Positions 32,477 through 33,714 of a stretch of DNA of 64,000 bases are shown piece by piece. Position 1 is the stretch's first letter, and every line of letters begins with the position of its first letter. A program made the translations under genes and the position numbers. The notes under the pieces are model-generated. The model was not told the origin of the DNA. It searched no databases and saw only the letters and a program-made list of their open reading frames with translations. The stretch is from Podarcis muralis. Taxonomy: Eukaryota. The DNA is taken from assembly GCF_964188315.1 (NCBI RefSeq), contig NC_135664.1, positions 74,958,001 to 75,022,000 of the forward strand, read 5' to 3'.

Positions 32477-32640
32477 CCTTTGACATTCCCTTCCTAATGT
32501 TGCTGTGTTAAGTGTTCTAGGAGATACTAAATTAAAAAAAAATCTTTATTTTTTTAAAAAGGACTGACAAATTCTTCTTTAGCTGAAACTCTAGGGAAGT
32601 AGCTACTAAAAAGGGACATGAGTGGTGCTGTGGTCTAAAC

Positions 32641-33328
32641 CAGTGTTTCCCAACCTTTTTTGGGCAAAGGCACACTTGTTTGATGAAAAAAATCTCGAGG
32701 CACATCACCATTACAGCCCCGTGACGTCAGCGCGCAGCGTCACGCCGGGAGGGAAGGGCGCCGGGGCGCTGCTGCTGCTGCTGCCGCCGCCGCTCCCGGC
32801 AGGCATGGGCCCAGCTGAGGCGGCGGCGGCTGTTGTGGTGGTGGCGGCGATAGCGGGCGGAGGAGGGGGCGGCGGCGGGGCCGAGGTGGCCGGCGGTGGC
32901 AGGGGAGGCGGCGGCGGGTGGAGCAGGAGGGCGGCCGAGGCCGGTGAGGGAGTAGGGTTGCCCGGGGCTTGAGGAGCCGTCACCGGGAGTTGCTGCTGCT
33001 GTTGTTGCTGCTGCTGCCCGGACATGCCGGCCTCCTCCTCGTCCGCTGTCTCGCGCTCCTCCCTTTTGCGCGCGCTGCCCCGCCGCCGCCCCATTGGCCG
33101 GGTCCTGTCAGCTGATCCTGTGTTATTTCCTGTGTGTGTGTGTGTGAGGGGAGAATGGAGAGAGAAACCTCGGCACCACCACCGCGGAGCCGCCCCCGGC
33201 TCGACGCGGATCCTCGCCGACGCCGCCCCGCCTCTCGCCGCCCGACTCGCCCGCCTCCCTCCCACGGCACACCAGGCAACGTCTCGCGGCACACTAGTGT
33301 GCCGCGGAACACCGGTTGGGAAACACTG
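32641..33328 (-). mobile_element. Non-autonomous hAT element, family A copy 2, carrying a RANBP9-like captured fragment at 32755-33210
   Basis: Same TIRs and arms as 1775-2230, in the opposite orientation. Perfect 8-bp TSD gtctaaac (32633-32640, 33329-33336). Inserted in the head of a Sauria SINE. Confidence 0.93.
32752..33025 (-). pseudogene. RANBP9: Captured N-terminal coding fragment resembling RANBP9 exon 1
   Basis: ATG at 33025 reads MSGQQQQQQQQQL...ASAALLLHPPPPPLPPPATSAPPPPPPPP...GSSSSSAPAPFP. Recalled human RANBP9 reads MSGQPPPPPPQQQQQQQQL...AAAALLLHPPPPPPPATAAPPPPPPPP...GSSAAAPFP. The sequence is low complexity, so the assignment needs a search. Confidence 0.8.
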
Positions 33329-33714
33329 GTCTAAACCATGGAGCACCTTGGGCTTGCAGATCAGAAGGTGGGCAGTTTTAATCCCCGTGACGGGGTGAGC
33401 TCCCATTGCTCTGTCCCAGCTCCTGCCAACCTAGCAGTTCAAAAGCAGCCAGTGCAAGTAGATAATTAGGTACAGCTGCAGCAGGAAAGTAAACGGCGTC
33501 TGTGGACAAACACTGGCTCCCTTAGCCTGAAAGGAAGATGAGCGCCACAACCCCATAGTCGCCTTTGACTGGACTCATCCGTCCAGGGGTCCTTTACCTT
33601 TACCTAGTTGTTACTTCAACCTGCTGAGCAGAGTCTCTTGTGTACCAGGCTGACCCAGAGGTAAGAACATAAGAAAACCTGCAGGATCAAGCCCACGGCT
33701 CATCTTCTCCAGCC

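What the first reader, a model, noticed from the sequence alone, without database searches (positions are those of the whole stretch)
32641..33328. hAT transposon carrying a captured RANBP9 5' end (Pack-type element in a lizard)
Seen: a 688-bp element with hAT TIRs (cagtgtttcccaa) and a perfect 8-bp TSD. Its 456-bp interior (32755-33210) has CpG-island character, a CCAAT box and, on the minus strand, an ATG at 33025 in a gccggcATG context reading MSGQ(Q)nL...AALLLHPPPPPLPPPATSAPPPPPPPP...GSSSSSAPAPFP. Known: the human RANBP9 (RanBPM, CTLH complex scaffold) N-terminus, recalled as MSGQPPPPPPQQQQQQQQL...AAAALLLHPPPPPPPATAAPPPPPPPP...GSSAAAPFP, has the same ordered blocks. Gene capture by TIR transposons is well known in plants (Pack-MULEs) and much less documented in vertebrates. 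Inference: a mobile element transduplicated the RANBP9 promoter/5' UTR and exon-1 fragment and dropped it into an OR cluster.
Basis: partly seen in the sequence, partly recalled or inferred. Interest (0 to 1): 0.95.

Follow-up and report, generated by a model that had tools for sequence, protein, structure and literature searches.

The report
Amplified lizard hAT transposon carrying RANBP9 fragment
This is one copy of a young, non-autonomous hAT "cut-and-paste" transposon in a lacertid lizard; its middle is stitched from two stolen host pieces, the start of the RANBP9 gene and part of another gene-promoter island, and the loaded element seems to have spread to hundreds of sites.

Summary
Positions 32641-33328 are a 688-bp element with perfect 15-bp inverted ends and a perfect 8-bp target duplication. 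It sits inside a tRNA-type SINE that rejoins cleanly when the element is removed. A second family member (1775-2230) shares the roughly 115-bp arms but has an unrelated interior.

The minus-strand ORF is truly RANBP9-derived. It is colinear from Met1 to APAPFP with native RANBP9 exon 1 of another squamate, and that exon matches human RANBP9 (PDB 7nsc_A, E=1e-41).

The interpretation needs two corrections:
- The "promoter/5'UTR" part (33050-33214, with the CCAAT box) is not shown to be RANBP9. It matches an orthologous CpG island found in two other lizard contigs that have no RANBP9 exon beside it. The cargo is therefore a two-source chimera.
- This copy is not a private capture. It is a 3'-shortened member of a family of roughly 10^2-10^3 loaded copies. 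Support comes from read depth and from at least 10 Podarcis muralis gene models holding cargo pieces, four of them ending in the translated TIR with different flanks.

The scan had already noted 12 RANBP9-loaded copies elsewhere in this genome, all unchecked.

It is a Pack-hAT: a known kind, unusual in vertebrates for its copy number.

The parts
32633..32640 (.). Left copy of the 8-bp target site duplication GTCTAAAC
   Evidence: The empty-site reconstruction is spanned by 5 other SINE copies.
32641..32655 (+). Left terminal inverted repeat CAGTGTTTCCCAACC
   Evidence: It is perfectly complementary to 33314-33328.
32641..32754 (+). Left arm shared with family copy B (2111-2230, 87.5% identity). 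It holds GGCACAC/GGCACAT subterminal motifs and a GTGACGTCA-containing palindrome. The last 12 codons and the stop of the ORF are encoded here.
32749..33033 (-). RANBP9 exon-1 fragment: about 8 nt (possibly about 20 nt) of 5'UTR, the ATG (33025-33027) and codons 1-92. It ends inside exon 1 after APAPFP. A 6-nt overlap TCCCTC (32749-32754) is shared with the arm.
   Evidence: blastn to native exon 1 in L002: 73% over 309 bp, E=6e-52. Protein identity 61% over 98 aa, colinear; HMMER E=6e-16 against 5.8e9 proteins. The L002 product matches PDB 7nsc_A RANBP9 at E=1e-41. Alignment A3.
32711..33027 (-). Chimeric ORF of 104 codons: 92 low-complexity RANBP9 N-terminal residues followed by 12 arm-encoded residues and a stop. 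No SPRY, LisH, CTLH or CRA domain.
   Evidence: No Pfam hit.
33034..33049 (-). Junction zone between the two host fragments. Its origin is ambiguous; it may be RANBP9 5'UTR.
   Evidence: Alignment A4.
33050..33214 (-). Second host fragment ('locus X'): an internal piece of a CpG island conserved in other lizards. It carries the CCAAT box (33093-33097) and a GCGCGCAAAA motif. A 4-nt overlap (33211-33214) is shared with the right arm.
   Evidence: P0124 and P0125. L003 is 86% identical over 168 bp and L004 76% over 195 bp. L003 and L004 are homologous to each other over 454 bp, extending beyond the captured piece.
33086..33168 (.). An 83-bp stretch that is missing in a common family variant. It is present in this copy and in L003/L004.
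   Evidence: Joint 33085>33169 seen in all four runs.
33211..33328 (+). Right arm shared with copy B (1775-1899, 88.8% identity), with three GGCACAC motifs including a palindrome.
33314..33328 (-). Right terminal inverted repeat
33329..33336 (.). Right copy of the TSD GTCTAAAC
1775..2230 (-). Second family member (copy B). It has its own 8-bp TSD AACTAGAG, the same arms, and an unrelated 221-bp GC-rich interior.

Best explanation
A 688-bp non-autonomous hAT element (a 'Pack-hAT') inserted into a SINE between two olfactory receptor genes.

**Structure.** Two arms of about 115 bp carry the 15-bp TIRs and GGCACAC subterminal repeats. These are presumably the sites bound by a hAT transposase supplied in trans. 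Between the arms lies a 454-bp chimeric cargo made of two pieces of host genomic DNA joined head to tail:
- about 165 bp from the core of a CpG-island locus of unknown gene identity (X);
- about 285 bp from the 5' end of RANBP9 exon 1 (a few nt of 5'UTR plus 92 codons).

**Likely origin (inferred).** Short overlaps at the outer junctions (AGGA and TCCCTC) fit capture by template switching during double-strand-break or gap repair of an excised or broken element. The chimera was then mobilised many times. The family contains longer versions (to the end of exon 1 and into intron 1) and many internal-deletion derivatives. The window copy is a 3'-shortened derivative of that family that inserted here.

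**Age and function.** The copy differs from the family majority at about 1% of sites and keeps full CpG content, so it is young. Its 104-codon ORF encodes only the disordered N-terminus of RANBP9 plus arm-derived residues, so a RANBP9-like protein function is not expected. Any effect would come from carrying a CpG-island promoter fragment; that is inferred, not shown.
For: **The insertion is real.**
- TIRs and TSD; empty-site reconstruction.
- Arms shared with copy B, interiors unrelated.
- 9 of the window's 14 GGCACAC sites lie in the four arms.

**RANBP9 origin of the coding part.**

**Origin of the upstream part from locus X.**

**Genomic rather than cDNA origin, and longer variants.**
- P. 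muralis models P0005, P0054 and P0055 read through HYKG into intron-like sequence.
- P0006, P0045, P0046 and P0066 end ...HYKG-WETL plus one different residue each. GWETL is the translated TIR, so these mark four insertion sites.
- P0046, P0054, P0055 and P0066 start with arm-encoded GGERRGGGGEDPRR, which maps to 33242-33201.
- One contig joins the arm at 32743 to sequence encoding ALNEQEKEL.

**Copy number.**
- In run X3, single-copy flank contigs have depth about 10-13. The non-repetitive cargo bins sum to 4.4-5.5 thousand, and the arms to 130-550 thousand.
- Libraries of only 2-19 Mb of contigs still hold about 65% of the cargo words, and runs of six organism labels hold it.
- 12 first-stage notes in 733 windows (unchecked).

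**Youth.**
- Private differences from the family majority at 32682, 32705, 32897, 32901 and 33220.
- CpG observed/expected 0.85-1.2.
Against: - The native RANBP9 and X loci of this same genome could not be read. Parent-copy identity, capture date and exact breakpoints are therefore inferred from other species.
- Depth sums of Logan contigs are not copy numbers, and GC-rich repeats may inflate them.
- No autonomous hAT with these ends was found, nor could one be searched for.
- X could still be a distal part of the RANBP9 locus, lying more than about 1 kb from exon 1.
- A 23-nt exact match links the right arm (33237-33259) to a site 300 bp upstream of RANBP9 in L002, in inverted orientation. 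It is unexplained and hints at a more complicated history.
- RNA reads over the cargo cannot be assigned between the native genes and the copies.
Confidence: 0.8

Rival explanations
1. Single contiguous capture. On this view the whole 454-bp interior, including the CCAAT region, is the native RANBP9 promoter, 5'UTR and start of exon 1 in this species.
For: The two parts are adjacent and both are CpG-rich. Their copy depths are similar. The only native RANBP9 upstream sequence available (L002) comes from a species too distant to align non-coding DNA.
Against: L003 and L004 carry the upstream piece inside a larger conserved CpG island, with no RANBP9 exon 1 for 0.8-1.2 kb downstream. They diverge from the element exactly where RANBP9 homology starts. 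No GT donor sits at the divergence point, so a spliced leader exon is unlikely.
Confidence: 0.12
2. Transposition-independent gap filling at this site. On this view an ordinary family member sat here and acquired RANBP9 and X filler locally, so this copy would be the founder.
For: Tan et al. 2021 (PMC8277862) find this the usual route for single-copy animal Pack-TIRs.
Against: The same cargo is multi-copy in this genome and in P. muralis. The cargo is held by runs of six organism labels. This copy carries private mutations relative to the family majority and has a shortened cargo.
Confidence: 0.04
3. Chance resemblance of low-complexity Pro/Gln/Ala/Ser coding sequence to RANBP9.
For: Composition-corrected pairwise BLASTP gives only E=0.02. 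The peptide alone finds no RANBP9 chain in the PDB.
Against: The alignment is colinear over 98 aa, including non-repeat blocks, and over 309 nt (E=6e-52). Family variants continue into the unmistakable [35 protein letters not shown] segment.
Confidence: 0.01
4. A co-opted regulatory element. On this view the dispersed X-promoter/RANBP9-ATG unit is an active promoter that affects neighbouring genes, here running antisense to the + strand OR genes.
For: CpG content is fully retained. RNA reads and RNA contigs cover the cargo. One P. muralis Kunitz-domain gene model includes 22 cargo residues as an exon.
Against: CpG retention is equally explained by youth. The RNA reads over the RANBP9 part mostly carry a variant (32938 G) that is absent from the family DNA contigs, so they probably come from the native gene. 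There is no locus-specific expression evidence.
Confidence: 0.1

Closest known systems
Animal Pack-TIR / Pack-hAT elements (Tan et al. 2021, Nat Commun, PMC8277862)
   Same: A TIR transposon with TSDs whose interior is replaced by host sequence. hAT is the commonest carrier (208 of 370). Breakpoints show microhomology, and multi-copy cases favour GC-rich captures. One frog case amplified a 5'UTR piece.
   Different: Only 4 of their 370 were multi-copy, with a handful of copies each, and no lizard case is mentioned in the main text. Here the loaded element appears to have reached hundreds of copies, is a two-source chimera, and has spawned many deletion derivatives.
HelibatN3 carrying the NUBPL promoter, 5'UTR, exon 1 and partial intron 1 in Myotis bats (Pritham and Feschotte 2007, as cited in Thomas et al. 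2014, PMC4224331)
   Same: A vertebrate DNA transposon that captured a gene's 5' end and amplified it to about 10^3 copies. There is a 5'-end capture bias, and promoter-bearing captures reach higher copy numbers.
   Different: Helitrons are rolling-circle elements without TIRs or TSDs, and they capture by read-through. This one is a cut-and-paste hAT with 8-bp TSDs.
Rice Pack-MULEs and plant Pack-TYPE elements (Jiang et al. 2004; PMC8903248)
   Same: Non-autonomous TIR elements that carry GC-rich gene fragments, often from more than one gene, and amplify them.
   Different: A different superfamily (Mutator, 9-10 bp TSD, long TIRs) and a different kingdom. Plant elements number in the thousands with many distinct captures. 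For this lizard family, only unchecked first-stage notes suggest many distinct captures.
Maize Ac/Ds: heterogeneous Ds derivatives (PMC3260210)
   Same: A hAT family in which non-autonomous members keep short TIRs and subterminal repeats but vary greatly inside, through deletion and filler DNA.
   Different: Ds interiors are mostly Ac deletions. Here the interior is host promoter and exon DNA, and no autonomous partner has been identified.

Membership tests
hAT superfamily (non-autonomous member) | 8-bp target site duplication | tested here: met
   GTCTAAAC flanks copy A and AACTAGAG flanks copy B. The empty site is verified against other SINE copies.
hAT superfamily (non-autonomous member) | Short TIRs (about 10-25 bp) starting with the YARNG motif | tested here: met
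   15-bp perfect TIR starting CAGTG. The motif rule comes from general knowledge of hAT elements.
hAT superfamily (non-autonomous member) | Target preference nTnnnnAn | tested here: inconclusive
   Copy A fits (T at position 2, A at position 7). Copy B fits only at position 7. Two sites are too few to judge.
hAT superfamily (non-autonomous member) | An autonomous relative with the same ends that encodes a hAT transposase (DDE/RNase-H fold with a hAT dimerisation domain) | not testable with these tools
   No transposase ORF lies in the window, and the rest of the genome cannot be searched.
Pack-TIR (Pack-hAT) | Interior derived from non-transposon host sequence with an identifiable parent gene | tested here: met
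   RANBP9 exon 1 and CpG island X. The parents were identified in other species, not in this genome.
Pack-TIR (Pack-hAT) | No transposase coding capacity | tested here: met
   The only ORFs are low-complexity or GC-rich, with no Pfam hit.
Pack-TIR (Pack-hAT) | The loaded element has itself transposed (several copies with different TSDs) | tested here: inconclusive
   Indirect support only: four P. muralis models end in the translated TIR followed by different flank residues, plus depth, tiny libraries holding the cargo and 12 unchecked notes. No second loaded copy was read at DNA level with its TSD.
RANBP9 gene or functional paralogue | SPRY, LisH, CTLH and CRA domains downstream of the N-terminal region | tested here: not met
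   The ORF leaves RANBP9 after codon 92 and stops 12 codons later inside the arm. No domain hit.

The most novel reading that the evidence does not exclude
This lacertid hAT family may be a vertebrate counterpart of rice Pack-MULEs. On this reading it has repeatedly captured CpG-island 5' ends of many different genes (RANBP9, X, the unrelated cargo of copy B, and the PPAT, SIX5, SPR and CRPPA cargoes in first-stage notes). It builds multi-gene chimeras and amplifies some of them to hundreds of copies. It thereby seeds promoter-like islands and new exons across the genome and contaminates gene annotation (at least 10 P. muralis models).
Probability: 0.4. Interest if true: 0.75.

Novelty: new member of a known kind. 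Interest (0 to 1): 0.5.

Why it matters
Gene-fragment capture by cut-and-paste transposons is well documented in plants. In the one systematic animal survey it is almost always single-copy (Tan et al. 2021).

This case is a chimeric, promoter-bearing Pack-hAT that is young, present in several related lizard species and apparently amplified to hundreds of copies. It would be the strongest vertebrate example of transposition-dependent Pack-TIR amplification. It also offers a natural system for studying how template switching builds such elements, because many junction variants coexist.

There is a practical consequence too. These copies already generate spurious "RANBP9/RANBP10-like" and chimeric gene models in a lizard proteome.

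Tried and rejected
- **PDB search with the cargo peptide alone** found no RANBP9 chain. The link was made through the squamate orthologue instead.
- **Composition-adjusted BLASTP** is weak (E=0.02). I relied on HMMER, nucleotide alignment and the family variants.
- **Native lacertid RANBP9 or X locus.** Three protein word-searches returned no assembled native exon 1 from lacertids. The likely reason is that Logan contigs break at this repeat; the pieces are only 80-140 nt.
- **P. muralis proteins** P0003 and P0004 are not on record with DNA.
- **Exact look-up of five window ORFs** found none in the collection.
- **P0003** was first taken as native P. muralis RANBP9. After it is more likely another loaded copy, so I no longer use it as the parent.
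- **Rfam** shows nothing in the element or in L003, L004 or L001. Gene X remains unidentified.
- **Arm folding** is no better than shuffled sequence (z=-0.18).
- **Spliced-cDNA origin** of the X-RANBP9 junction is rejected. There is no GT donor at the divergence point, and family variants contain intron 1.
- **Literature searches** found no description of this lizard family.

Full report
**1. Anatomy**

The stretch 32641-33328 is bounded by a perfect 15-bp inverted repeat (CAGTGTTTCCCAACC) and a perfect 8-bp direct repeat GTCTAAAC. The TIR pattern occurs five times in the window, against 0.31 expected. Two further occurrences bound a second element at 1775-2230, which has its own 8-bp duplication AACTAGAG.

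Removing the element and one copy of the duplication rebuilds a continuous tRNA-derived SINE. Five other SINE copies in the window align straight across that junction. So this is a real insertion with a real TSD.

The two elements share arms of about 115 bp at 87.5-88.8% identity, but their interiors are unrelated: 454 bp in one and 221 bp in the other, both GC-rich. The arms carry a repeated GGCACAC motif; 9 of the 14 occurrences in the 64-kb window lie in these four arms. An 8-bp TSD, a CAGTG-type short TIR, subterminal repeats and no transposase ORF together describe a non-autonomous hAT element.

The neighbours are olfactory receptor genes.

**2. Is the coding part RANBP9? Yes.**

The minus-strand ORF from the ATG at 33025-33027 (104 codons) found a 153-aa Logan protein, P0001 (E=6e-16 against 5.8e9 sequences; 61% identity over 98 aa).
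- P0001 continues into ...[64 protein letters not shown].
- P0001 matches human RANBP9 in PDB 7nsc_A at E=1e-41, including the AALLLHPPPP, ATxAPPPP and SSAxAPFPH blocks.
- Its contig L002 shows a normal exon 1 ending in AAAG|GTGAGG.
- At DNA level the cargo aligns to that exon at 73% over 309 bp (E=6e-52).
- The protein alignment is colinear from Met1 to APAPFP.

After APAPFP the native genes read HGGD/HCGD..., whereas the element runs into the arm (PGVTLRADVTGL, then stop). The six bases TCCCTC at the join are common to both partners.

**3. The upstream part is a different locus.**

A library-wide HMMER search with the in-frame translation of the whole element found two proteins, P0124 and P0125. 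They match only the translation of 33050-33215. Their contigs L003 and L004 come from two other sequencing runs.
- They match the element at 86% over 168 bp and 76% over 195 bp.
- They have no RANBP9 exon 1 in the 1.17 kb and 0.8 kb that follow.
- Alignment A4 shows all three sequences running together through the CCAAT box to ...GGAGGAGCGCGAG. There the element switches to the RANBP9 leader (..GGCCGGCATG) while L003 and L004 stay with each other.
- L003 and L004 are homologous over 454 bp, extending about 190 bp upstream and 60 bp downstream of the captured piece.
- Each is a roughly 600-bp CpG island set in AT-rich, CpG-poor DNA.

They therefore look like orthologous native islands of an unidentified gene X. 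Rfam finds nothing there. The cargo is thus a two-source chimera, with a 4-nt overlap (33211-33214) at the arm/X join. I put about 0.8 on X being separate from the RANBP9 promoter. The residual doubt is that the same-species loci could not be read.

**4. It is one member of an amplified, heterogeneous family.**

Searching with a P. muralis fragment returned at least 9 different short P. muralis UniProt models with RANBP9 exon-1 sequence:
- Four end ...[13 protein letters not shown] plus one variable residue. GWETL is the translation of the TIR GGTTGGGAAACACTG, so these mark four insertion sites of a variant in which the end of exon 1 abuts the TIR.
- Four begin with GGERRGGGGEDPRR, which tblastn maps to the right arm and the first bases of X (33242-33201), joined directly to EKELKRRL...
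- Three read past HYKG into intron-like sequence.
- Two are frame-shifted internal deletions.

A tenth model, a Kunitz-domain protein, contains 22 cargo residues as an exon.

Laying contigs and reads on the locus gave the following:
- Single-copy flank contigs have depth about 10-13 in X3 and about 94 in X1. The non-repetitive cargo bins sum to 4.4-5.5 thousand (X3) and 72-136 thousand (X1). The arms sum to 130-550 thousand (X3).
- An 83-bp deletion variant (33086-33168) appears in all four runs.
- One contig joins the arm at 32743 to sequence encoding ALNEQEKEL, which is a longer cargo.

These depth sums are not copy numbers. They agree in order of magnitude with two arm copies per 64 kb here, and with 12 first-stage notes of RANBP9-loaded copies in 733 windows (unchecked). 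Both point to roughly 10^4 arms and 10^2-10^3 loaded copies.

Cargo 31-mers are held by runs of six organism labels, and even by libraries of 2-19 Mb of contigs.

The window copy differs from the family majority at 32682, 32705, 32897, 32901 and 33220, which is about 1%. It keeps CpG observed/expected at 0.85-1.2. Both point to a recent insertion.

**5. RNA**

In a stranded-looking RNA run, reads over the RANBP9 part are strongly one-sided (first mate on +). Of these, 26 of 32 carry G at 32938, a base absent from the family DNA contigs. Most of them therefore probably come from the native RANBP9 mRNA.

Over the X part the two strands are balanced. This fits two different parents. It gives no evidence that this copy is transcribed from its own promoter.

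**6. Mechanism**

Shown:
- the insertion itself;
- the shared arms;
- the two host-derived pieces;
- short overlaps at the junctions;
- the existence of longer and shorter variants.

Inferred:
[quoted passage not shown] 2021;
- trans-mobilisation by an unseen hAT transposase;
- generation of derivatives by abortive gap repair.

The ORF lacks every RANBP9 domain, so protein function is unlikely.

**7. Comparison and novelty**

This is a Pack-TIR of the hAT superfamily, a kind already described in animals. That survey reported 370 cases, 208 of them hAT, but only four multi-copy with a few copies each.

The nearest vertebrate analogue in outcome is HelibatN3, which amplified the NUBPL promoter, exon 1 and partial intron 1 to about a thousand copies. 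That element uses a rolling-circle mechanism.

I found no paper describing this lizard family. I therefore file it as a new member of a known kind, notable for copy number, chimerism and youth. The species is probably Podarcis or a close lacertid, judging from the near-identical P. muralis fragments. That is an inference.

**8. Unexplained**

- A 23-nt exact match links the right arm (33237-33259, also present in copy B) to a site about 300 bp upstream of RANBP9 in L002, inverted relative to the coding sequence.
- Contig L001 has a cargo piece (ATG-15 to codon about 50) abutting another first-exon-like CpG island, with no TIR in 1.6 kb.

Noticed in passing
window 1775-2230: A second member of the same hAT family (TSD AACTAGAG, opposite orientation). 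It has an unrelated 221-bp GC-rich, CpG-rich interior without an ATG-led ORF, and it is inserted in another repeat whose ORF reads LDYCNALYVGLPLK... The source of its cargo was not identified.
   Followed up: partly
window 33237-33259 and 1852-1874; L002:1219-1241: A 23-nt exact match between the inner right arm of both family copies and a site about 300 bp upstream of the native RANBP9 ATG in a distant squamate, inverted relative to the coding sequence. It may be chance in GC-rich DNA, or it may mean that the inner arm is itself an older RANBP9-region capture.
   Followed up: partly
L001:1-1751 (Logan ERR14042001): A cargo piece (15 nt before the ATG to about codon 50, 92% identical to window 33040-32866) is fused to another GC-rich first-exon-like sequence with a GTGAGT donor, followed by ordinary AT-rich DNA. 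There is no hAT end in 1.6 kb. It could be a rearranged copy, a third captured gene, or an insertion into a promoter.
   Followed up: partly
P0004 (Podarcis muralis Kunitz-domain gene model, UniProt): The model contains EAGMSGQQQQQQQQQLPATAPQ between two Kunitz domains. This is a piece of the transposon cargo used as an exon in the annotation. At least 9 further short P. muralis models are cargo fragments, one of them named RANBP10.
   Followed up: partly
window 33086-33168: An 83-bp deletion variant that removes the CCAAT box is common among family DNA contigs. It is the majority form among RNA reads across that spot (44 joint reads against a depth of 4-16).
   Followed up: no
window 32938: RNA reads show G in 26 of 32 cases where all family DNA contigs show A. 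The reads probably come from native RANBP9 mRNA, although A-to-I editing of a + strand transcript is not excluded.
   Followed up: no
L004:12-24: The contig that carries the native-looking X island in another species also starts with the end of a family element (TTGGGAAACACTG). So the hAT family is present in that more distant species too.
   Followed up: no
window 32612-32640 plus 33337-33600; also 25876, 35142, 17573, 18602, 55088: At least six copies of one tRNA-derived SINE lie in the 64-kb window. The element's host SINE is 79-84% identical to the others.
   Followed up: partly
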